64,000 nt of DNA. Source: Vitrella brassicaformis CCMP3155. Taxonomy: Eukaryota; Protista; Chromerida. The number at the start of each line of letters is the position of its first letter. Within the stretch, counting starts at the first letter, position 1. Location: contig CDMY01000322.1 of NCBI GenBank assembly GCA_001179505.1, forward strand, positions 1 through 64,000. The letters run 5' to 3'. The notes below the pieces were generated by a model. It ran no database searches and was not told the origin of the DNA. It saw only the letters and a list, made by a program, of their open reading frames with translations. This document shows positions 40,634-54,269 of this stretch, piece after piece. A program made the translations under genes and the position numbers.

Positions 40634-43600
40634 ATGTTGGCGCTGTACAGTGTTCTCACGTACGGGTCCTTCTACATATCGCTCCACAGACACGACTCCC
40701 TCACAGAGTGGATCAACGCAGAATGGTCGGTGGGCAGCACAAGAGAGGCAACAGCTGAGGCAGAACCACCGTCTGGACCTACATCTACTGCTGGTGTTTT
40801 GTGTGTGCCGTGTGTTTGGTGTTTGTGTGGCGCAGGACGCTGCTGGTGCTGCTGAACGTGCAGGTCAACACGTGCCTGCTGATCTTCCAAATCGCAAACA
40901 AACTCTTCCTCGGTACGCAGGACGCACAGCACACACAGGAGTGACTGAATCTGCATGATAGCGGTGCTCTTGCCGTCAGGCGGCATCCGGCCGTACGAGC
41001 GCAAGAAGATCGTTGAGAAGTCCATGAGCTACGTGGTGAGTGAGTGCGTCAGAGTGCGTCAGCTGGCCATCATACGGATGACACCCACGACGGATGGACC
41101 TTTGGTTTGCTGTTGGTCAGATGTGGCGGGTTTTGTTCATCGTCTACATGACCAATTTCTACCGGAAGGAGATGCTCATGTACCTCATCTGGTGCACCGT
41201 GCCGGCGTTCCTGCGCAACTCGCTGGAACTCATCAAAAGTAGGCGACAGCTCATCGGACACTCAGCAGCCAGCCATGAGCTGTCCATCTCATCTGTGTGT
41301 GTGTGTGTGTATGTGCGTGTGTGCTGGCTGGCAGGTCGGTTATTGAATCCCCCCGAGCACGCCACCGAGAAGCCATATAGGCGGCTGGTGGCCCTGCTGG
41401 CCTACTGGCTGTGTGTGGTCACGTGTGCGGCCCTGTGGATCATGCTGTCGAGGGTGCTGCTCTTCGATGTGGCCATTCCACTACAGCTCTGCCTCATCTA
41501 CGAGGTGAGCAGCCACACACGCGGATATAAAGAGGCCAACGATGTCATGATCTCATTCTGCCTGCCTTGTTGTGTCCATTCAGCCTGCCCTGGTGCTGCT
41601 GAGGTCGGCATCGGTGGGCTTCCAGGTCGTAATGCACTGCATCGACACGCAGGCACAGCAGAACAAGTGAGTGTGGGAGGCGGGGAGGGGGGGAGGGAGG
41701 GAGGGAGGGGAAGCAGCCATAAGTTTGCCGCGTCCCAAATTGGTCGGCTTTATGTGGACATCAATCGACTGACTGACCGCCGCACGACGCGAAGAGGGAG
41801 TGTTCGGGGGTCCATCAAGAGGGCTGCTCTCACACACACGCGATGGCAGCACCTAGAAGCTGACTCCTACACTCACATATATACGCTGCATCATCGACAG
41901 TGCATTGTCATGTGCCATTAATTCATTTGATATCGTCTGATGTGTAATGTGTGTTGTGTGTGTTGTGTGTGTCGTACGTGTGTGTGTCAGGTACACGTCG
42001 ATTTTCACGGTGAAGATGGTGGTTGAGCTGCTGATCAACGGCCTCATGGCGGCCCACGACATGTTCCTCTGGGCGGTCTTCGGCTCCTACTCAGCCATGG
42101 ATATATTCATCATGTGTAAGTAACCACAGCCACCTGAGAGAGCCGTGCAGACTCACACAGAGAGAGAGCCCAAGCAGACAGATCTTGGTAGGTACTTGCC
42201 TGGTGTGGCGTCTGGCGTGTATGCTCGCTGCAGGCTCTCTGCGGATATCAATCATGGCGCTGAGGCGACAAGTCAGTCAGCTGCCACGCCACACAGCCAG
42301 GCAGATGGACTCAGAGGCCGCTACAAAGGTTTGAATGCCTTATCACCTATGTGTGTGTGTGTGTGATGCAGTACAAGCGGCTGCGCAACTTTCGTGTGGT
42401 GAGCAGTCTGTTGGAGAAGAGCTTCCCACCGGCCACTGCGGACGAGATCAAGAGCCCCAACGAAATTTGCGTCATCTGCAGAGACGTAGGCACTGCACTG
42501 CACACAACCGAGCGACAGACAGGACAGCCTGTAGGGCAGGGAACGTGTTGGCGCTTCCCTATCTATCTGCAGACCATGAGCTCGGCGAGGAGGCTCCCGT
42601 GCGGCCACGTCTTTCACCTGTGAGTGAGAGGAGGACTCCTTCCCAGAATGAACACACAGTGCCACCCAGGACTGGTCCAATGGTCAACTTGTGCTGTGCT
42701 TGCTGGTGCTGTGGTTGTCTTGTCTTGTCTCAGGCACTGTCTGCGTCAGTGGCTGGAGAATGAGATCACATGCCCAATCTGCAGGGCCACCCTTCTGTCA
42801 GGCGATGACGCAAGGTCAGACAGACATGCACCAGAACAAACAGGGGAACAGCAGCCAGCATCAATCCATCGGTTGCTGTCTGTCAAATCAATCAGGTTGC
42901 TGTCCGACCACACACGAGCTCGCCGTCACGCCCCAGCTGGCGTGCACGTGCCGCCCCCAGACCCGCTCTTCCCCATGCCGCCGTTCGTCACACAGCAGCA
43001 GGGTGGCAACCAGGGTGGACAAACTAACAACAGGCCACCGGCGGCAGCGGCAGCACCACTGCCTAGAGGCAAGCTGACGAGAGGACGAGACAACGGATCC
43101 ACAGTCACATGACATACATCATTGCAATGTCTTGTGCGTGCGTGTGCGTGTGCAGTCCGGTTGGCGGTGTCCGTGGGCCGCCCCAATGGCGAGCGGGGCC
43201 TGCGGCTCTCGACAACCACAACTGTGCCGATTGACGCGGGCCAAAGGGGCACCACACAGGAGGCCGCCAACGGTCAGACAACGATGAATGGCGGAGGGGA
43301 CGGGCAGCCACCACAGCAGCAGCAGCAGCAGCAGGCGGCACCACAGCCGGCGCAGAGGCGGGTCATCACACGGGCCATTCATTTTACCATACCAGGTGCG
43401 GGCACATCGATGTAAGACATGCATCGCATCGACGGCTGAGTCGTATGCCATGTGATGTCTGTCTGTCTGTCTGTGTCCATAAATGTCAGCCCCCCATCGT
43501 GTGGAGCGCTTCTTCACCCTGGTGTCCTTCCACGTCATCCGACTCGTGGTAAGCAAGCAGCTGGCCAGCCAGGCCAGCCAACCAGCAATTGTGTCGACAT

Positions 43601-44008
43601 ATGTGTGTATGCCCTGCTCAGTTTTATTTTGTGTACTACGTCTCCCGCCTCTTTTCGGCGGCCGCAATCAACGAAGCCCCCCTGCTGCCGCCTGACCTCA
43701 CCAACTTGATCAACCAGCCACCGCCCACCGCCCCCACGACGCAGGACACGGGCCCAGCGGCACAGCAGCCAACACAGAACGGACACACCACCAACGGCCC
43801 TTCGACAGCCGAGCAGGAGACTCAGCCACTACACACAGACCAAGAGAGCATCGCTGCTGCTGGTGTTGGTGCTGATGGTTTGTCGCTATTGGGTGGCGAG
43901 GCTGCCGGTGCTGCTGGTGCTGCTGGAGATGAGGACTCATCGCAGGTGCGGTCGCGTGTGGGCCTGGTGCCGCCCACCGGGGACAGGGGGGAGGAGGCAA
44001 TCGATTGA
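40634..44008 (+). CDS. Polytopic RING-H2 E3 ubiquitin ligase (HRD1/gp78-like, ERAD)
   Basis: Several hydrophobic exons (LFLGGIRPYERKKIVEK), then CVICRD-..[27 protein letters not shown], then a P/Q-rich tail. Confidence 0.85.
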
Positions 44009-44700: not shown

Positions 44701-47294
44701 TTAGTCCTCGTCCATGTCGTCGTCGTCTTCTTCATCATCTTCATCGTCCTCCTCCTCATCGTCGTATCTCATGTGCAGTTTGCCCTTCTGCGTGTCGCTC
44801 ATCTTGATCTGGAGACAACAGACAGACAGACAGACAGACAGAAAGGCAGATGGAGATAGACGGCAGGTCACGGCTATGTCCTCGATAGACACGTACCATG
44901 CCCGTTGCCTTCCTCTCCCGCAGCTTCTTGGACCGCTTCGATTTCCGGTCGGAACGACCGAACTCCTCGTCCTCCTGCAGACAAACACGGAGACACACAT
45001 TCGTATGACCGCAAGTTAGTTGGTTGTGTGTGGGTGGGTCTGATGCTCACATCTTCATCCTCGATGTCGGTGTCGTGTCCAGTGAAGCCCACTCCCCTAT
45101 TGTTGGGCGAGTCGTCTTCCTCTCCGAACTCCTGCGACTGCTGGCCAGGAGTGTTGGGCTCGCTGTCGGCAGTCAGCAGCTTCTGCTGGGAGGCACTCAT
45201 TTTGATCTGTCCAGTGGGCCGGCGCGCGAAGAGCTTGGCCTTCCTTTCTGCTGCCCTTTTGCGAGAGTGGAAATGAACTTCGTCATCGGTTTCTTCGTCC
45301 TTGACCCTGCTGTCGAATTTGATGCGACCAACAGCCTGAGGCACTTCAGGCAAGTCATCCTCTTCGTCATCGTCTGGGCCGCCAAACTCCGATGGTGCCT
45401 CGCTGTCGCCAGCGTCGATGAGGGCCTTTTGCTGGGCCGGGGTGAGCTTCAGCTGACCAGTGGCCTGTAAGTAAAAGCGAAGAGGCGACAACCGATGTGT
45501 GTGTTCGGATGAGTTTGGTGGTCGTGCCGTAGTACTTTTCTGGCGAGGAGTTTGGTGTGTCTGGCTGTTTTCCTGTGTCTCTCGTTGAACGTATCATCGT
45601 CATCGTCTTCGACGTCGGTGTCATGTCCAGTGAAGGCCACGCCCTTCTTGTCACCTTCCTCCTCCTCCATGGCGAACCTCGCCGCCGTCGCCGGGAGTCG
45701 GAGGCTCGCCGCCCCACCTTTACCCTTGGCCTTTTGGCTACGGGCCGGGGCCGACTCCTCATCGTCAGCATCGCCATCCCACCACTCCTGTGGTTCATCC
45801 TGTCCGGGCGTGCTGGGCTCGCTATCAGCCGTCAGCAGCTTCTGCTGCGATGAAGTCATTTTGATCTGTCCGGTGGGCCGCCTCGCGCCAAGCTTGGCTT
45901 TCCTCTCCGCCGCTCTTTTGCGGCTGTGGAAATGAGCTTCGTCATCGGTTTCTTCGTCCTTGACCCTGCTGTCGAACTTGATGCGGCCGACGGCTTGCGG
46001 CACCTCAGGCAAGTCATCCTCCTCGTCCTCGTCTGGGTTGCCAAACTCCGATGGTGCCTCGCTGTCGCCAGCGTCGATGAGGGCCTTCTGCTGGGCCGGG
46101 GTGAGCTTCAGCTGACCAGTGGCCTGTAAATAAGGACGAAGACAGCAAAAAGTTTTGTGGTGAGGAGTTTCTGTTCTCTCAGGGATCGTGCTGCAGTACT
46201 TTTCTGGCGAGGAGTTTGGTGTGTCTGGCTGTTTTCCTGTGTCTCTCGTCGAAGGTATCATCGTCATTGTCGTCGACGTCCGTGTCGTGTCCGCTGAAAT
46301 TGACGTGTCCATGTGCCTTGGGGCTGATGGGGGACTCCTCGCCTGAGAAGACGATGAGACCGCTGCGAGTATCTCGGACACTGCATGAAATACCGCCCAC
46401 CTATGTCCATATGGTCCTCGTCAGTTTCATCCTCTACGTCTTTGCCCAGGGTTATCGGACCTGAATGCAATGCGCATCACCACATGCACATACCAGAGCC
46501 GGCGAGCCCTCAGTGATGCTCACCGGTCTTTTTCCTCTGCAGGAGTTTCTGCTTCCTCTTGACCCTCCTGCCTGTGTCATTGAATCCTTCGTCGGCATCT
46601 CCTTCCTCTACCACCTTGCCGCTGAACTTGACCCCTCCACTCTCCCTCACCGCACCCGGCAAAGGCGTCTCGCCGTCGCCGCCAGACGTCATCATGGGGT
46701 GGGTGAGCACCGACGGGTCCTCCACCAGGCCGGCTTTGTCCTTCTTGTCGATGACGATGCTGTCGAGATCACCCAGGGGAGGCGCCGACCTGGCGTTGGG
46801 TGTGTTGAGATTGCTGATCGGCGAGCCGACCTTGGCCGAGGGGCCCTTTGACGAGATGCGGAGGGCTGATTTGGGGGGAGACATGACACTGCCAGGCTGC
46901 TTCTTGACGGGAGCTGACGTGGATAGACGGAGAGACCACATGGACGTGAGGGCGAGGAAGCGCTTTTGTTCTGTGCGTTTATACCTTCTAGCTCTTCGCG
47001 GTCGAGCTGTCCTGAGCCCTTTTTGCTGTCGTTGGTGATGTCAAGCAGGCCCTTGCTTCCTGAACGAGACCCGACTCGAGACGCCCCTCGCGACGCCGCT
47101 GCTTCGGGAGCACAACGAAATGATGGAGGCACTAGCGCTGTCCAAGTGCTCATGTTACCGAAGCTTCTGATTCTGGACAACAAGTTGCCCTTTTCCCTGA
47201 GCTCCTGGACCTTGGCCTTGAGTCTGTCGACCATCCGCTCGCTCTTGCTGCGGCCTCGCTGGAGCTTATGCTTGTCCCTGAGCTCCTGAGTCAT
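44701..47294 (-). CDS. Acidic/basic low-complexity repeat protein with repeated V-x-F..RK/RR-x-TG modules (5' end uncertain)
   Basis: Open exons with repeated GHDTD(V/I)(E/D)D and KL(L/F)ARK/R-x-TGQ-x-K motifs; stop TAA at 44701-44703. Confidence 0.65.
45140..46298 (-). repeat. Intragenic tandem duplication, period about 660 bp (exon-intron-exon)
   Basis: ~45140-45632 versus ~45800-46298: exon parts are near-identical (ATGQLKLTPAQQKALIDAGDSEAPSEF..) while the intervening introns have diverged. Confidence 0.9.
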
Positions 47295-47629
47295 TGTCCG
47301 CGAGTCCCGAGAATCTTCCTCGTCAAGATTAGTCGTCTGATGAGAAGAAAGAAAGCGTAACACCTGTGTGCTCCGTTTTGGTGGTTGTACTGTCTTCTTG
47401 AGGATCTCCTTGTGGTGTGAGGGGCAGAAGGAGACGCGGAAGAACAGCCTGTTTTCAACAAAAGAAGGTACAGGCGCCACCTGCGTCACATGCGGGTGTC
47501 CCTCCCTTACTTTCCCGTGGGAATGATCTTCTTCTTTTTCCCTGCGCCGAGCTTGCCCAGCACCGATCCGAACGAACTGGAAGAGGATCGACATATATAC
47601 GCATTAATTACTTAGACGTCACCAACGGT

Positions 47630-50600
47630 TCACTTGCTGGCGTACATCCGCCTTTGCAGGCTTTGCAGGGCACTGAGTGAGCGTTGAGCGGTGGAGAGCA
47701 GGATGGGCTTCACAAGACTCTCGGAGGACACCATCTGTATGACAGAAGGTGCCAGCATTGTCAGAGCCGCAATTAATGCCTTGTCTAAATAAACGTTGCT
47801 GACCCCGCTTGCAAGTGTGCGAGAGAGATTGACGCGATCGCCCTCTGCGCCCCAGTAGGTCGGACAAGCGCGGAAATAGACCTGCGAGACACAATGTACA
47901 ATCAGTGAGTGCTCCATGATCATAAATCTGGCATTCCAATCTCCGTTAGTACGTCTCCAATGACGTAGTTTTTGAGGCTGGTCCTGCCTCTGTTCCAGGG
48001 CGACAATTGTCTGGTGGGCTCGGAGGCGATGACGGTAATGCGGATCAGCAGGTCGTTGGCTATCTCGTTGCCCACGTTGGCGAACTCAACACTCTGATTC
48101 GTTCAGAAGGAAGAGAGAGCATCTCCTCTGTGTGTCTCTCCTGTGTGTCACTTGTGTGCGGCTGACCTCGTTCCACACTGGGTTGCCGTACTCGACGGCG
48201 TGGGTGACTCGCGGCCTTCGGAAGTTTGGGTGAGCCTCGTTGTCCTCCTCGTCGCCCCTACACGCACCGACACTCAGACAATCTCACGAACCAACAAGAC
48301 AGACAGTTTGAATACTGTGTCTCTGTTTGTTTACCTGCAGAGCCTCACTTCGACGAATATGGTCATGTGGCTGTGGTCCTCGTCCTGCTTTGCGCCGGGG
48401 TGGAGCTTCAGCTGTGACTTAAGCTCAGCCTTCTCCAGCTTGATGCGGAGAGTGCCGAGGGGCAAGAAGACGGGCATCTCACCGTCCTCCATTAGATTGC
48501 CTGGCAGGCAGAGAAGAGGATCACATGAATGACACACACGTCTGGAGACGCACGTGTGTTGTCTGTCTGTGCTCTTGCTTACCTGACATCCGCTTGCCCT
48601 TTCTTGCCTGTGCGCTGTCCTTGAGCGCGCGGCTCGCGTGAGCGAAGGCACTCAAGGCAGACTGATAAAGGACACCCACAAGCAATGGCACAAATCGGTG
48701 CATTCTCGCGCCTGGCTCATCCTCACCTCCATGGTGCCGCTTGTGGATTTGTGCAGCCTGAGTCTGCCTGCCTCGGGTGAGAGCCACGAGAGGTCCCACT
48801 CGCAATACAGCTGACCTAGCGAATGCACCAAGGACTCTAACACCTGACAGGCGGCCAGAGACAGACAGCAAAATCGCTGGTCCGTCCACAGGAGGCTCCC
48901 TTGTCTGTTTGTCACCTCTTGTCTTGCTTGCTGCACGTTTTGGATTGCATGCTCCTGACACAGCCAGCGAGATCAACGCCGCATCGTTCGCGACACAAAC
49001 GACGTAGGCATCCCGCACTCGCTCACTCACCGCCCAGTCGAGGCCCTCGAGCTCTTCTTGACGCGACACACGCAGTCGCGTGAACGGACACTGATTCATC
49101 AACTGCACACACACACACACCACAGATACACAAACAAAAGGTGTGTGCAACGTCAGGTCTCCCTCTCTCTCACGGACAATGATGGTCCCGGCTGTGATGG
49201 CTGCCGTGGTGCTGATTACAGCGATCACGCCGTACACCTGTTCACCCAGCAGCTCAAGAGCCTACAATGCCAGGACAGGCAAGGATGGTTGTTCTGGGGT
49301 TGTGGATGGTTGTGTCTGAGTTAATACCTCTTCCAATTCGGTCGATCCGTCGGCCACCAGCAGCCCAACCTTGACGTAGTCACCGCATCGATTCGACTGC
49401 ACACACAGACAGAGAGCCGGAGACGAATTATTGCGGAGGGTCGGCCTCGCTAGCTCTTCGACATGATAGTACCCTGGCGAAGAGCCCGACGGCCACAGCG
49501 CCCCAAATGCCTGCGGCCCCATGGATGGGCCAGGCGCTAACCACATCTGATGGGACAGACATACACACAGAGTGTGAGCAATATGTGACTGGCATATCGA
49601 CGATGCTCTTCTGTCCAACCATCAATGTGTGCCCTGCACGAAAGACACGGAAAAAAGCGATGACGAAAGGCGGGAGCCGGCATGTGTCGATTGATTCATG
49701 TGTACCAACCATGCCAAGTGTCTCCTCGACAGGAACGCGCAGAATGCACCGATCAGCCCGATAAGCAGCCCATGAGATGGAGAAAAATACGATGCGCCTG
49801 TACATTGTGTACAGCCATGCGTGTTTGAACGGCACCATCGAGCACACGACGGCGCGTCTCTCACCACTGGTGACGCTCACAAGCCCCGCCAGTATGCCCA
49901 GCGACAGGTCGGCGACTTTGAACGGCCGAAAGGTGCTGAGGACGGCGGCAGACAGGCCGCCCCCGCACGCCCCTAGCACGGTGACGGCCGCCACTCTCGA
50001 CGCAACGTACCCCAGCTCGTGGCTGAGGCCGTGGGTGGAGCCCGGAATAATGCCAAACCTGCATAGCGGGGTCGATAATCTCCAATTCTTATGTCTCAAT
50101 CAAATCATAGTGTTTCATTGGCTTTGACATACCAGCCAAACCAGAGCAGGAATGTGCCGATGAGGAGCCAGAAGGGTTGTGTGACGAGCTGCAGCGGGGG
50201 CATGCCAAGTGGCAACACGTAGCACTCGGGGTCCGGTGATCGCCGCTGCAGCACCTCGTAGATGTGGGACCCATTCCAAGGCGTGTAGTCCTAGCGAAAA
50301 AAGAAAAGAACGCTGTCTGTCTGTCTGTCTGTCTGTCTGTTGATGGCCTTGGGTACCGCGAATCGTCCCACACGCGGGCCCAGAAAGATTGTCGTGACAA
50401 GGGCTGCAGTGCCGCCAACCACATGAACCGCCGTGCCACCCTGAAGCGACACACACCAACGACATGACCAGTTACAACCATCCAGAGGCTCGTGCGCCTG
50501 CGGACCGCAAAGTCGACAAAGCCCTCTTCATTGAGCCAGCCTGAACGAGACATTATTGGCAAAAGAGTGCCTCCTGCGCTGTCAGACCCAGATACGGCTC

Positions 50601-51329
50601 TGAGTGTTTGTGTACCATCGTGGCGCCATATCCAACCCTAGAGACGGGACACACACAGGACAAAGCAACAGCAATCGACCGGTGCTGCCGCCCTCCACGT
50701 GTGGATGTGATGTGGCTGACCGATATCAGCGGGTATGTGCATCCGGCCGTCACAAAGCAGAGAAGCCCGAAGCTACGAAGCGAGATGCGCTCAGCCACAG
50801 GGCCACTGAGAATCGTTGTCGCTGACCGACCATCACAGACACTTACTTGCCCAACGCAAACACATGTCGGTTGGTTGGTGGCATTTCTCACCGAGTCCGG
50901 CGAAGACAAGGTGGAAGAAGTAGAAGGCCAGGTCATCGGGGTCAGAAAACACGCTCAGAGAACGAAAGGCAAACGAATACCCTGCACACAACCGATACAG
51001 GACAGAACAGAAAAAGAAAGGCGAGCAAGGCCTTGCCACAATCCCCCTGGCGGCCACCCCCCGTACGCACCGATGTATGTGTAGCTGACGATGGTGATGA
51101 GGAAGTCGATTGTGTTCTTGACGAGGATGCTGTTGGCGTTCTTGCCGGCCACACATGCCGCTTCGACCATGGCGAATCCCGCCTGCATCAGGAAGATGAG
51201 GTAGGCCGACTGCAGGATGTACCCCTCGTTGACCGAGTTGCGAAACGCCGCATCCTCGCACCCGCCCGAGGTGACGACGAACGTGTCGAAACACTCACCG
51301 AACACACACGAAGTGCTGTTGGTGGCCAT
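47630..51329 (-). CDS. AMT: Ammonium transporter (Amt/Mep/Rh) with C-terminal C2 domain
   Basis: FLMQAGFAMVE, FVDFAGGTAVH, GTFLLWFGW, WPIHGAAGIWG, LRVSRQEELEGLD. In-phase exons then give GTLRIKLEKAEL..IFVEVRL..THAVEYGNPVWNE..YVIGDVYF. The last exon is less certain. Confidence 0.88.
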
Positions 51330-51789
51330 GGTCGCTCAGCAGGTCAGGGGGGAAAGGTGAAAGGGGTAACGCAAGAGGGGCAGAAGGGAAAGCCCCAATG
51401 CTCGTGTGTAGACGTAGACTGTCGTCCTCCTGCGCCCGTAGTCAGCGGCCTTCGACGTCAGGCTCCCGCGGCTGCTGGAGGCCTCATGGCACACATGCGC
51501 AGAAGAAAGTCAAAGGTGTGGTTCTCTGGAGCACTAGGAAAAGGCCTGAAGTGTTCGGAAACGCTCCCGCGTCTCGCATGGGTGGGGGCTTCTGGGGGCC
51601 AGCGACCCGTTTCACGCTTTTCCCAAACACAGAAAGAGTCATCCTCTCCAATTGAGCTTAGCGAGGCTAGCGAGAGCATCAGGGTGACACAGAAGGTCAC
51701 CTTTGTCGATATTCGCTGAGTTTGAGAATCGGCACTCATCCCATCTGCCGCTGCTATACCTCTGTCGCCAGCAGATCATCACATCCGCC

Positions 51790-54269
51790 GTGAAGTGCCC
51801 GTCGGCCACCACCACGGCCACAGCAGACGGTGCCGACAGACTAGCAGCGGAGATGAGCGGCCGGCCGATGCTGCTCAACGTGGGCGGCTTCGTCATGGCG
51901 TTCCCTCGGGATGTGCTGCTGCGCGAGGGGCTGCGGGACACCTGCCTGGCGGTGCTGCTGAACCGCTTCGACAGCTGGATGATCACAGACGACAATCGCA
52001 TTCACTTCATTGACGCAGACCCCTTCTACTTCATCTGGTGAGGGGGAGGGAGGGAAGCAACACGATGGCTGACAGGCAGCAGAACTCGCCGTGTGTGTGT
52101 TCAGGTTGGCTGTGAAGCTTCGGTACCTTAGCTGCAACCGCATCGACGTGAGTGAGATCATCGAGGGCTGCCCCGCACTGGCCTTCTACCACGACCGTTT
52201 CTTCGCCAAGACGGCCGTCACCATCGAGCCGCAACACGGTGACCACGACAGCGAGGCGTTCCGGGGCTTCACGGCCGTCGTGGCGCCGTTCATCAGCTCA
52301 TCGGTGGCGGGCGGGACGGGCGGCAGTGAGGTGCTGAGTGTGCGTGTGGCGGATGGCGGTGTGGTGGCCACGACCGACGCGACGCTGGCCGACTACAGCA
52401 TACTGCACGACCGATTCATCAAGTAGGTCTACAGGCGGAGATGAGATGGCCTGGTGGTCATCTTGGGCACCGTGTGTGTGTGTGCAGGTATGGGCCCGTC
52501 GCGAATGTGTCGGCAGACACCTTCCACAAGTAACACACCACAGCAGCAGCCAGGCGGCACACGAAATCTCCATGTGTGTGTGCTGTGTGCAGGGTGGTGG
52601 ATTACGTCCGTCGCATTCGGTTGGCCCCCGACGCCGCCACGCCGCTGCCGACGAGCACTTGGCCTGACGAGCTGCTGTATGCCTGTGACATGTACGGCCT
52701 CATGGAGCGGGTGTACCTCTCGATGATCGGCAAATCCCACAGCCACATCAAATGCCTCTTCAAGTGAGTCACAACACACATTAGAGGGGGACAAGAGGGA
52801 GATGCCATGTGTTGATTTGGATGCCTTTGTGTGTCAGGAATTCGTCTGACGGTGGAGAGTTTGGCACTCTGGTAGAGCGAGTGGCGGGTGTGAGCGGCCT
52901 GCTGTTCGTTATCGAGGACGAGAAGCAGCACACCATCGCCTGCCACATCGACGGCCCCCTCATCCCCCCAGCTGACCCCACATCGACGCTGACCATCGGC
53001 TGCCCCGTGACCTTCTACTCCATCAGTGGGCCATTCGAGGAGGGCGGCATCGCCGAGATGACCGTGCCGCACACCGAGCAGCGTGTGATAGTCGCTGGCA
53101 CAGAGGGGGCGGTGAAGAACCCCCAGGGCTTGCGCGTGGGCAAGGTAGCCATCGGTGGGGGCCGTCTGTGGCTAGGGGTCGGAGAGGATGGGCGGCCGTC
53201 TGGCGACCTCCGCAGCTGCTGTCAGTGGGTGGAGAGGGATGAGCTCCCCGACGACAAGGCATATGTGGGTGACATGAGTGAGGACGGCCGGGCCACCATA
53301 GCTGCCAGCCACTGGTTTACCGCCCAGCGACTGGAGGTCTACCAGGTCAGACCGACAGACACATCAAGTGGACTGACGTCATCATGTCGATGTGACGTCT
53401 CTGTCCATGTGCGTCTGTGTGTGTCTGTTCAGGTGTGGAGCACTCTCCCGGCCGACCCCATCCTCCCCGCCGATGACCTCCACGCCCTCATCGACATGAC
53501 ACGCGACATATAGATGACCGCCCAGCTGCTCTACAAGTGGGTCAGCCAAAGATGAGCCGGGGGCCGTGATGCTATCAGCGTATCTCTCTCCTGTCTGTCC
53601 GGCTGTGTCAGGGGCGAGCGTGACGGCTGGGCGCACGAGACCATGCTGGCCAAGGTGGGCGAGGCGGCCGACCTGCTGCTGGTGGCCAAGGACACCGGCA
53701 GCCACACATTCGCCAGCCACATCGAGGGACAGCTCAAGCAGCCGGCCGACCCCACTGGAGTGGAGACGACATTCTGCCCCGTGACCTTCTACTCCATCAG
53801 TGGCGCATTCGAGGAGGGCGGCATCGCCAAGATCACCGTGCCACATGTCGAGCAGCGTGTGACAGTTGCGGGCACAGAGGGGGCGGTGATGGCCAACAAC
53901 GGGTGCGGGAGCGGCAAGGTGTCCATCGGTGGCGGCCGCCTGTGGCTGGGTGGTGTGGGGGAGGGGCAGCCGGGCGGCGACCTGCGCAGCTGCCATCAGT
54001 TTGTGCGGAGGGGTGATCTTCCCGACGACAAGGCGTACGTGGGCACCTTCAGGGAGGGGGGACGGCCATCTTAGCCGCCAGCCACTGGTCCACATGTGTC
54101 GATTTGGAGATTTACACACTGCAGGTCAGAAAGGGCCAGCGGGAGGAGGGGGGCACATGAGTGTTTTGATTCCGTTGCCCTCCTGGTTCTGTCTGTGTGT
54201 GTGCAGGTGCCGGATGGCTGGCAGTGGCTGAGTGCGGTGGCCGACATCGTGCCCTCACAATCGCCGTGA
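51790..54269 (+). pseudogene. BTB-BTB-TLDc-TLDc family gene, copy 4: premature TAG in linker exon and frameshift in TLDc-B (truncated gene or pseudogene)
   Basis: GAC ATA TAG at 53511-53513 where other copies read GGG. One base is missing at ~54061-54067 (GGA CGG CCA TCT TAG versus GGA CGG GCC ATC TTA). Confidence 0.8.

What the first reader, a model, noticed from the sequence alone, without database searches (positions are those of the whole stretch)
47630..51329. Ammonium transporter fused to a C-terminal C2 domain
Seen: a complete Amt core with both pore histidines (GGTAVH at ~50423, WPIHG at ~49521). After LRV..GLD..EH, four linker exons join in correct phase to a C2 signature (GTLRIKLEKAEL, IFVEVRL, NPVWNE, YVIGDVYF). 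Loop 1 is acidic (QDED) but the usual loop-3 Asp residues appear replaced. Established: Amt proteins are regulated through their C-terminal tails, and prokaryotic Amt fusions to signalling domains act as ammonium sensors; C2 domains bind phospholipids, with or without Ca2+. I do not recall a described Amt-C2 fusion. Inference: a lipid- or Ca2+-gated transporter, transceptor, or membrane-contact tether.
Basis: partly seen in the sequence, partly recalled or inferred. Interest (0 to 1): 0.75.

Follow-up and report, generated by a model that had tools for sequence, protein, structure and literature searches.

The report
Ammonium transporter fused to C2-like domain
One gene of the coral-associated alga Vitrella brassicaformis makes a single spliced mRNA that joins a sensor-type ammonium-transporter module to a C2-like membrane-binding domain and a long repetitive tail. 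We found this combination nowhere else in our searches, and it may couple ammonium sensing or uptake to membrane signalling.

Summary
The fusion is real. A single 3378-nt spliced cDNA contig (run X6) runs from the 5'UTR at 51574 through every Amt exon, three linker exons and the C2-like exons, using GT..AG introns only.

The stop at 47630 lies in an intron, and the gene continues to 44701. The public Vitrella brassicaformis model (P0001, 1399 aa) carries only an Amt Pfam hit.

That public model omits exon 49797-49710 and a 14-nt micro-exon (34 aa, one membrane helix). The cDNA contains both.

C2 identity rests on four concordant but individually weak tests:
- Pfam C2 is the only family hit, but below threshold (E 0.003).
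- 18 of 20 language-model neighbours are C2 families.
- Foldseek returns C2 in 50/50 and 48/50 top hits.
- A sequence-free structure search returns C2 at Z 7.9.

The Amt module is closest to the solved ammonium receptors Ks-Amt5 and Sd-Amt1 and keeps their N1/N2 ligand set. The invariant inner-gate Phe-Asn is replaced by Ile-Ile.

None of the 120 best long Amt fusions carries C2. No sequence relative of the C2-like region was found, and no paper describes the architecture.

The scan noted three further Amt-C2 loci on other pieces of this genome; I did not test them.

Verdict: a new variant of Amt fusion proteins. Function is inferred.

The parts
51330..51574 (-). 5'UTR present in the cDNA contig. 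It holds a short upstream ORF (MCAMRPPAAAGA).
   Evidence: record 21, piece 51070..51574; sequence.
49031..51329 (-). Amt/Mep-type module in 14 exons: 51329-51071, 50981-50892, 50821-50721, 50637-50616, 50540-50506, 50440-50357, 50290-50133, 50058-49865, 49797-49710, 49633-49620, 49546-49473, 49396-49328, 49261-49178, 49102-49031.
   Evidence: Exon lengths sum exactly to the cDNA contig coordinates. Pfam PF00909 E 1.1e-59. PDB best hits are 6EU6, 8QJ3 and 8QPF.
50616..50637 (-). 22-nt micro-exon encoding GWIWRHD, with the conserved Trp residues of the outer ammonium recruitment site.
   Evidence: Needed to keep the frame and present in P0001 at residues 151-157. Trp conservation 126/128 and 128/128.
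49710..49797 (-). Exon 9, encoding one membrane helix (the ninth by homology, not numbered here). It is absent from the public gene model.
   Evidence: In the cDNA contig by length arithmetic. Not found in P0001. Homologues have exactly 34 consensus residues in the P0001 gap. Hydrophobic, 1.64.
49620..49633 (-). 14-nt micro-exon encoding AHID, part of the conserved IDD motif. It is absent from the public gene model.
   Evidence: table 5c: 12 letters lie between 49547 and 49709 in X6. Flanking cag|..|gt sites.
48583..48954 (-). Three linker exons (48954-48916, 48843-48727, 48661-48583), about 80 aa, with no family match. By eye they look like helix-forming sequence; no fold covered them.
   Evidence: Junctions 49030/48953, 48913/48840, 48727/48661 and 48582/48499 in X6. 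No Pfam hit.
47804..48500 (-). C2-like core in four exons: 48500-48335, 48257-48167, 48093-47953, 47881-47804. This is P0001 residues about 494-651.
   Evidence: Junctions in X6 and X1. Pfam C2 is the only hit, E 0.0033. Atlas 18/20 C2. Foldseek and VIA-align top hits are C2.
47511..47734 (-). Insert in the C2-like domain, in two exons (47734-47646 and 47576-47511): a predicted helix plus a polybasic GKLGAGKKKK stretch.
   Evidence: Junctions 47804/47734, 47646/47576 and 47510/47447 in X6 and X1. Helix in the AF2 model, at low confidence.
47577..47645 (-).
   Evidence: the joint 47576/47646 skips 69 nt with CT..AC ends, in two runs.
47159..47448 (-). Exon starting (K)LFFRVSF, a probable last C2 strand, followed by the start of the tail with a coiled-coil-like RMVDRLKAKVQELREKG. 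The public model removes a further 54-nt in-frame intron, 47390-47337.
   Evidence: Acceptor at 47448 in the cDNA. P0001 residues 703-782. The strand assignment is inference.
44701..47059 (-). Charged C-terminal tail (P0001 783-1399) holding about three tandem units. Two full copies are about 196 aa and about 660 nt apart. The tail carries six [RK][RK]xTG motifs and two RIKF motifs. Stop at 44703-44701.
   Evidence: P0001 maps here. Repeats. Motifs and composition. cDNA support reaches only to about 46200, where the contig stops at the repeat.

Best explanation
What is shown: one Vitrella brassicaformis gene (window 51574 to 44701, minus strand) is transcribed and spliced into a single mRNA. 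Its product has four parts:
1. A complete Amt-family membrane module. It has the twin His, the pore Asp, the outer Trp/Ser site and the outer Phe. It also has every N1/N2 ligand position of the bacterial ammonium receptors.
2. A linker of about 80 aa.
3. A C2-fold domain.
4. A charged, repetitive tail of about 670 aa.

What is inferred: Amt proteins place their C-terminus in the cytoplasm, so three C2-like domains would hang under the Amt trimer against the inner leaflet. The domain appears to lack most Ca2+ ligands and carries a polybasic insert. I take it to dock constitutively, or in a phosphoinositide-dependent way, on anionic lipids.

Proposed mechanism: ammonium occupancy of the pore and N1/N2 sites moves the C-terminal regulatory helix, as it does in Ks-Amt5, Sd-Amt1, plant AMT1 and Mep2. 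That changes how the C2-like domains and the tail sit on the membrane, or lipid binding acts back on the pore. The tail, with repeated basophilic-kinase-type sites, would serve as a phospho-regulated docking scaffold.

Overall I read it as a regulated transporter/receptor (transceptor) with a non-enzymatic, membrane-binding output.
For: - Single mRNA: one 3378-nt contig, all joints GT..AG. Exon lengths sum exactly. A second study covers the C2 junctions.
- Public model of 1399 aa on the same exons.
- Amt module: PF00909 E 1.1e-59; conserved residues in a 128-sequence alignment.
- Receptor-like character: the PDB ranking is Ks-Amt5 6.6e-34, Sd-Amt1 7e-30, Af-Amt1 7e-25, Mep2 5e-21, AmtB 2e-8. 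The signature QX6EX15NX2DF is matched. Q49, F52, E56, K71, N72, D75 and F76 align to Sd-Amt1 Q22, F25, E29, K44, N45, D48 and F49, whose roles are given in PMC11152129.
- C2 fold.
- No hydrophobic segment after residue 430.
- Tail motifs.
Against: - C2 is below Pfam's gathering score, and both AF2 models are low confidence (pLDDT 45 and 48). The fold-search support could partly reflect sequence bias.
- No homologue of the C2-like region exists to build an alignment.
- The N1/N2 signature is also carried by plant AMT1 proteins, which are true transporters (PMC11152129), so it does not prove a sensing role. The T-x2-S element sits 42 residues after DF, not 54-60.
- Ile-Ile replaces the invariant Phe-Asn, with unknown effect. 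The inner Phe is essential in AmtB but dispensable in AtAMT1;2 (PMC6856177).
- No binding, transport or localisation data exist.
- cDNA support for the last 1.5 kb is lacking.
Confidence: 0.6

Rival explanations
1. It is an ordinary ammonium uptake transporter. The C2-like domain and tail serve only to sort, anchor or cluster the protein in a particular membrane, or to mediate its endocytic turnover. No ammonium signal passes through them.
For: Twin His, Asp, Trp/Ser and the outer Phe are all conserved. Cluster-2 Amts include proven transporters (PMC11152129). A single Phe suffices in AtAMT1;2 (PMC6856177). C2 domains commonly act as membrane-targeting modules (established knowledge).
Against: The closest solved relatives are the two receptors, not the assimilatory Amts. 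The invariant Phe-Asn is lost. A 1000-aa cytosolic extension is large for a sorting signal.
Confidence: 0.27
2. The region after the Amt core is not a true C2 domain. It is a lineage-specific, partly disordered extension that merely resembles a beta-sandwich.
For: Pfam gives 18.1 bits against a cut-off of 22. Single exons give nothing. There is no PDB sequence match. AF2 pLDDT is 45-48. Z is under 8, which the tool calls middling. No relatives were found.
Against: Four methods point to the same fold and to no other. C2 is the only Pfam hit. Of the Atlas hits, 18 of 20 are C2. Of the structure hits, 98 of 100 Foldseek rows and most of the 50 VIA-align rows are C2, covering 110-115 of about 125 residues at 3.0 A.
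Confidence: 0.1
3. The fusion is an artefact: two neighbouring genes were merged by the transcript assembler or by the gene predictor.
For: Only one run (X6) spans the Amt-to-C2 junctions, and contigs are not single molecules (tool caveat).
Against: There is no intergenic stretch. Each step from 49031 to 48500 is a canonical splice junction that keeps one open frame. The independent genome annotation joins the same exons.
Confidence: 0.03

Closest known systems
Ks-Amt5 (Kuenenia stuttgartiensis; PDB 6EU6), an ammonium sensor histidine kinase
   Same: Best solved sequence match of the Amt module (E 6.6e-34). The same buried acidic pair aligns (E31/D50 to E56/D75). A C-terminal cytosolic module is fused after the Amt core.
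   Different: The output there is a histidine kinase. Ks-Amt5 keeps both Phe-gate residues and has bulky F27/Y30/F34 blocking the pore; here those positions are F, V and C. It is bacterial.
Sd-Amt1 (Shewanella denitrificans; PDB 8QJ3/8QJ4/8QPF), an Amt-HAMP-GGDEF ammonium receptor
   Same: Second-best solved match. The equivalents of Q22, F25, E29, K44, N45, D48, F49, T104 and S107 are all present.
   Different: The output there is a diguanylate cyclase reached through a HAMP domain. Here it is a non-enzymatic C2-like domain. The T-x2-S spacing is 42 rather than 54-60. The inner Phe-Asn is lost here.
Plant AMT1 and fungal Mep2, transporters or transceptors regulated through the C-terminal region
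   Same: They are eukaryotic. Their C-terminal region after the last helix acts as an allosteric switch. AMT1 shares the N1/N2 signature cluster (PMC11152129). The LRV..E.E..GLD..EH motif is kept here.
   Different: Those tails are short (tens of residues) and regulated by phosphorylation. They have no folded lipid-binding domain and no repeat tail.
Diplonemid Amt fusions (Artemidia motanka, Namystynia karyoxenos transcriptome proteins P0151, P0102, P0004)
   Same: They are long eukaryotic Amt fusions to signalling modules. P0151 is the best non-self hit among long proteins (29% identity).
   Different: The partners are guanylate/adenylate cyclase and cNMP-binding domains. None has C2.
C2 domains (KIBRA, rabphilin C2A, PI3K-C2alpha, synaptotagmin)
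   Same: Best structural matches of the low-confidence model (Z 7.9-7.4, 112-114 residues, 3.0 A). The sequence hallmarks G.L.I...A.L, NPVWNE and IGD are present.
   Different: It falls below Pfam's threshold. Loop-3 Asp ligands appear replaced (by eye). Loop 1 is long and acidic. An insert of about 50 aa with a KKKK run lies before the putative last strand.

Membership tests
Amt/Mep/Rh (Pfam PF00909) | Profile match above the curated cut-off | tested here: met
   202.6 bits against a cut-off of 23.2, E 1.1e-59. Exon 1 alone scores 30.5 bits.
Amt/Mep/Rh (Pfam PF00909) | Twin pore histidines and the conserved Asp before the first His | tested here: met
   H175, H323 and D167 (P0001 numbering) sit in columns that are 128/128 conserved.
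Amt/Mep/Rh (Pfam PF00909) | Phe gate (two Phe residues) | tested here: not met
   The outer Phe (F113) is present. The inner Phe and the following Asn are Ile253-Ile254, where 128/128 homologues have F and N. Genome and cDNA agree, with no differing letters.
Amt/Mep/Rh (Pfam PF00909) | Eleven membrane helices with a cytoplasmic C-terminus | tested here: inconclusive
   Hydropathy peaks are consistent. The helix missing from the public model is supplied by the cDNA-supported exon 9. Orientation is inferred from homology only.
Ammonium receptors (AmR; Ks-Amt5 / Sd-Amt1 class) | N1/N2 signature QX6EX15NX2D[FT]X54-60TX2[ST] | tested here: inconclusive
   QX6EX15NX2DF is an exact match at residues 49-76. 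T119 and S122 align, but the spacing is 42. The signature is taken from PMC11152129.
Ammonium receptors (AmR; Ks-Amt5 / Sd-Amt1 class) | Binds ammonium without efficient translocation and modulates a fused transducer | not testable with these tools
   Needs electrophysiology or biochemistry as in PMC5764959.
C2 domain (Pfam PF00168) | Profile match above the curated cut-off | tested here: not met
   Best score is 18.1 bits, E 0.0033, against a cut-off of 22, covering profile positions 18-74 of 104. It is the only family hit.
C2 domain (Pfam PF00168) | Eight-stranded C2 beta-sandwich fold | tested here: inconclusive
   Model pLDDT is 45-48. Even so, top hits are C2 in 50/50 and 48/50 Foldseek rows and in most VIA-align rows, best Z 7.9.
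C2 domain (Pfam PF00168) | Five Asp Ca2+ ligands in loops 1 and 3 (Ca2+-dependent subclass only) | not tested
   Read by eye only: QDED in loop 1, and VIASE / NYVIGD where xDxD / DDxIG are usual. No residue-level alignment was available.

The most novel reading that the evidence does not exclude
Vitrella carries a small family of eukaryotic ammonium receptors. An AmR-type Amt trimer reports ammonium occupancy not through an enzyme but by repositioning three lipid-binding C2-like domains and a phospho-regulated scaffold tail on the inner leaflet. This would be a new output logic for nutrient transceptors. It may be tied to nitrogen exchange in a coral-associated alga.
Probability: 0.2. Interest if true: 0.75.

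Novelty: new variant of a known kind. Interest (0 to 1): 0.58.

Why it matters
Amt proteins fused to signalling modules are the only structurally understood ammonium receptors, and all characterised ones are bacterial with enzymatic outputs.

A transcribed eukaryotic gene that joins a receptor-type Amt module to a C2-like lipid-binding domain would extend that principle in two ways. It would reach eukaryotes, and it would add a non-enzymatic, membrane-directed output.

It also offers a natural variant of the invariant inner-gate Phe-Asn for the unsettled question of what the Phe gate does.

On the practical side, the public gene model is wrong in two respects. It lacks a membrane helix, which would invert the predicted topology. 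It also carries no C2 annotation.

Tried and rejected
- Exon-by-exon Pfam scans of the C2 exons, linker exons and tail gave nothing. The pieces are too short, so this says little.
- phmmer of the C2-like region and of the 64-aa Amt exon against PDB sequences found nothing.
- Two word-index searches for relatives of the C2-like region returned only the protein itself (length ranges 770-2450 and 399-1269 aa). No alignment could therefore be built, and both AF2 runs were single-sequence and low confidence.
- tblastn of nine homologues did not pick up exon 9. A local alignment of exon 9 to the homologues' consensus in the gap was weak (score 26; 18 of 500 shuffles reach it). The exact 34-residue gap length and the cDNA are the real evidence.
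- The Atlas search with one tail repeat gave no usable hit.
- The search of earlier findings by sequence was blank.
- My first hand-built exon model had phase errors until the two micro-exons and the GTCCGT and GTACTA donors were recognised.
- I considered a processed DNA copy and rejected it. The DNA-type contigs of X2 and X5 are collinear with the introns, and only X6 and X1 carry the joined form.
- Literature searches for Amt plus C2 domain, and for Vitrella plus ammonium transporter, found no description.
Full report
**What is in the sequence.** The interval holds a minus-strand eukaryotic gene with short GT..AG introns. I derived the exons from frame-consistent splice sites and then tested them against public reads.

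**Transcript evidence.** Six runs hold the stretch, and I laid four of them on 47400-51600.
- Runs X2 and X5 carry contigs collinear with the genome, introns included.
- Run X6, from the same sample, carries one 3378-nt contig in the spliced form. It starts at 51574 (a 245-nt 5'UTR) and passes through every Amt exon, three linker exons and the C2-like exons. It continues 872 nt past the left end of the laid stretch.
- Every joint has CT..AC ends on the plus strand, which is GT..AG on the gene strand.
- My exon lengths from 48727 to 51574 sum to 1745 nt, exactly the contig's span.
- Run X1, from a different study, carries the spliced junctions of the C2 exons and of exons 1-3.
- No letter differs between cDNA and genome.

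The Amt core and the C2-like region are one mRNA.

**Corrections to the observation.**
- The stop at 47632-47630 lies in an intron (47645-47577, donor GTACGC) that both X6 and X1 remove.
- The frame continues through a 66-nt exon (SFGSVLGKLGAGKKKKIIPTG) and then an exon beginning (K)LFFRVSF at 47448.
- There are three linker exons, not four.

**Public model and organism.** A search of 1.84 billion representatives with exon 1 returned one strong hit, P0001, 100% identical and 1399 aa long. It is an unnamed protein product of Vitrella brassicaformis CCMP3155, on contig CDMY01000322.1 of GCA_001179505.1. Its only precomputed Pfam family is PF00909.

P0001 contains all my exons downstream to a stop at 44701. 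That includes exons I had inferred beyond the read evidence.

P0001 lacks exon 49797-49710 and the 14-nt micro-exon 49633-49620. Together these encode 34 residues: a hydrophobic helix and the AHID(D) motif.
- The cDNA contig includes both. Table 5c shows 12 of the 14 letters.
- An alignment of 128 Amt homologues has exactly 34 consensus residues in the P0001 gap.
- Without that helix the predicted topology would place the tail outside the cell. The public model therefore needs correcting, unless it is a rare in-frame isoform.

**The Amt module.** PF00909 matches at E 1.1e-59.

In the 128-sequence alignment the following are all conserved: the twin His, the Asp of FVDFAG, both Trp residues of the recruitment site, the Ser, and the outer Phe. 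The motif GWFG-FN-xGS, whose F and N are invariant in 128/128 homologues, reads GWFG-II-PGS here.

The literature on the inner Phe is mixed. It is essential in E. coli AmtB, but its Ala mutant is fully active in AtAMT1;2 (PMC6856177). The consequence here is therefore open.

Against all solved structures the module ranks as follows:

| Structure | E-value |
|---|---|
| Ks-Amt5 (6EU6) | 6.6e-34 |
| Sd-Amt1 (8QJ3/8QPF) | 7e-30 |
| Af-Amt1 | 7e-25 |
| Mep2 | 5e-21 |
| AmtB | about 2e-8 |

The PDB identities were checked in PMC5764959 and PMC11152129. The top two are the two characterised ammonium receptors.

Their proposed signature QX6EX15NX2DF is matched exactly in exon 1. Q49, F52, E56, K71, N72, D75 and F76 align with Sd-Amt1 Q22, F25, E29, K44, N45, D48 and F49. 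T119 and S122 align with the T-x2-S element, though 42 rather than 54-60 residues downstream.

The same paper places plant AMT1 transporters in this signature cluster. The signature therefore marks receptor-capable Amts, not receptors only.

**The C2-like domain (P0001 about 494-712).** Single exons give no Pfam hit. On the contiguous database protein, C2 is the only family found. It scores E 0.0033 and 18.1 bits, under the cut-off of 22.

Further tests:
- Language-model neighbours in the ESM Atlas are C2 families in 18 of 20 hits, at score 0.93.
- No sequence relative of the region exists among 5.8 billion proteins in the length ranges searched. AF2 therefore had to run without an alignment and gave pLDDT 45 and 48.
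- Even so, Foldseek returned C2 domains in 50 of 50 and 48 of 50 top rows, with E between 0.01 and 0.8.
- A search of 48,161 chains by structural superposition returned mostly C2 domains. The best were KIBRA, rabphilin C2A and PI3K-C2, at Z 7.9-7.4 with 112-114 residues aligned at 3.0 A.

Each line is weak, but all agree. I put the C2 fold at about 0.85-0.9.

By eye, loop 1 is long and acidic, and the loop-3 Asp pair is replaced (VIASE). A roughly 50-aa insert, with a predicted helix and a KKKK run, precedes GKLFFRVSF, which looks like the last strand. These readings are inference.

**The tail.** Residues 726-1399 have no hydrophobic segment. They are 23% Asp/Glu and 17% Lys/Arg.

The tail holds about three tandem units. 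Two are full copies of about 196 aa, 660 nt apart and 87-91% identical at the DNA level. It carries six [RK][RK]xTG motifs and two RIKF motifs. No family or Atlas match was found.

The X6 contig ends at about 46200, where the repeats begin. The last 1.5 kb therefore rests on the annotation alone.

**Is the architecture known?** Among 1913 Amt-containing proteins of 605-1925 aa, the best 120 are fused to several partner types:
- histidine kinase with PAS and receiver domains
- GGDEF
- MCP signalling domains
- PII
- SpoIIE
- guanylate cyclase (in eukaryotes)

None is fused to C2. The nearest long relative is a diplonemid Amt-cyclase at 29% identity. Three literature searches found no Amt-C2 description.

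The scan's own notes list three more first-reader reports of Amt-C2 fusions on other pieces of this genome. I could not reach those loci, so they remain an untested lead towards a lineage-specific family.

**Mechanism.** This section is inference.
- By homology the Amt C-terminus is cytoplasmic.
- The conserved LRV..GLD..EH segment is the allosteric switch in AMT1 and Mep2, and the signal conduit in the bacterial receptors.
- A linker then leads to a C2-like domain that probably binds anionic lipid without Ca2+.
- I propose that ammonium occupancy and C2-membrane docking are coupled through that segment. The charged tail would act as a phospho-regulated scaffold.
- The main rival is a plain transporter whose C2 only targets or anchors it.

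**Limits.** Whole-protein analyses used the database model P0001, which lacks 34 residues. Scripts joined exons only to check phase and junction peptides.

Noticed in passing
window 49620-49797 (minus strand): The public gene model (P0001, GCA_001179505.1) skips an 88-nt exon and a 14-nt micro-exon that the cDNA contig contains. The 34 missing residues are one membrane helix plus the IDD motif, so the deposited protein has an inverted predicted topology.
   Followed up: yes
window 44870-46400 (minus strand): A tandem duplication with a period of about 660 nt (87-91% identity) lies inside the 3' coding part of the gene. Each unit encodes RIKF..(about 30 aa)..RRPTG and GV.FTGHDTD..RHRKTARHTKLLARKATG. 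From memory, the RIKF-then-RRPT arrangement recalls the PP1-docking plus PKA-site layout of phosphatase inhibitor-1/DARPP-32. This was not tested.
   Followed up: partly
window 51459-51494 (minus strand): A short upstream ORF (MCAMRPPAAAGA, then stop) lies in the cDNA-supported 5'UTR of the gene.
   Followed up: no
window 50304-50348: A (CAGA)n microsatellite sits inside an intron. The DNA contigs of X2 break here, and the reads tool skipped it as a repeat.
   Followed up: no
proteins P0151, P0102, P0004, P0053 (not in the window): Diplonemid transcriptomes (Artemidia motanka, Namystynia karyoxenos) encode proteins of 1500-2800 aa. They join one or two Amt modules to guanylate/adenylate cyclase or cNMP-binding domains, which makes them candidate eukaryotic ammonium receptors.
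   Followed up: partly
window 41701-44008 and 51853-53513 (plus strand): The annotated neighbours are a RING / TPR_SYVN1-type (HRD1-like) E3 ligase downstream and a 434-aa product without Pfam hits upstream. The start of the upstream product reads like a BTB/KCTD tetramerisation motif (LLNVGG..F). Neither has an evident link to the Amt gene.
   Followed up: no
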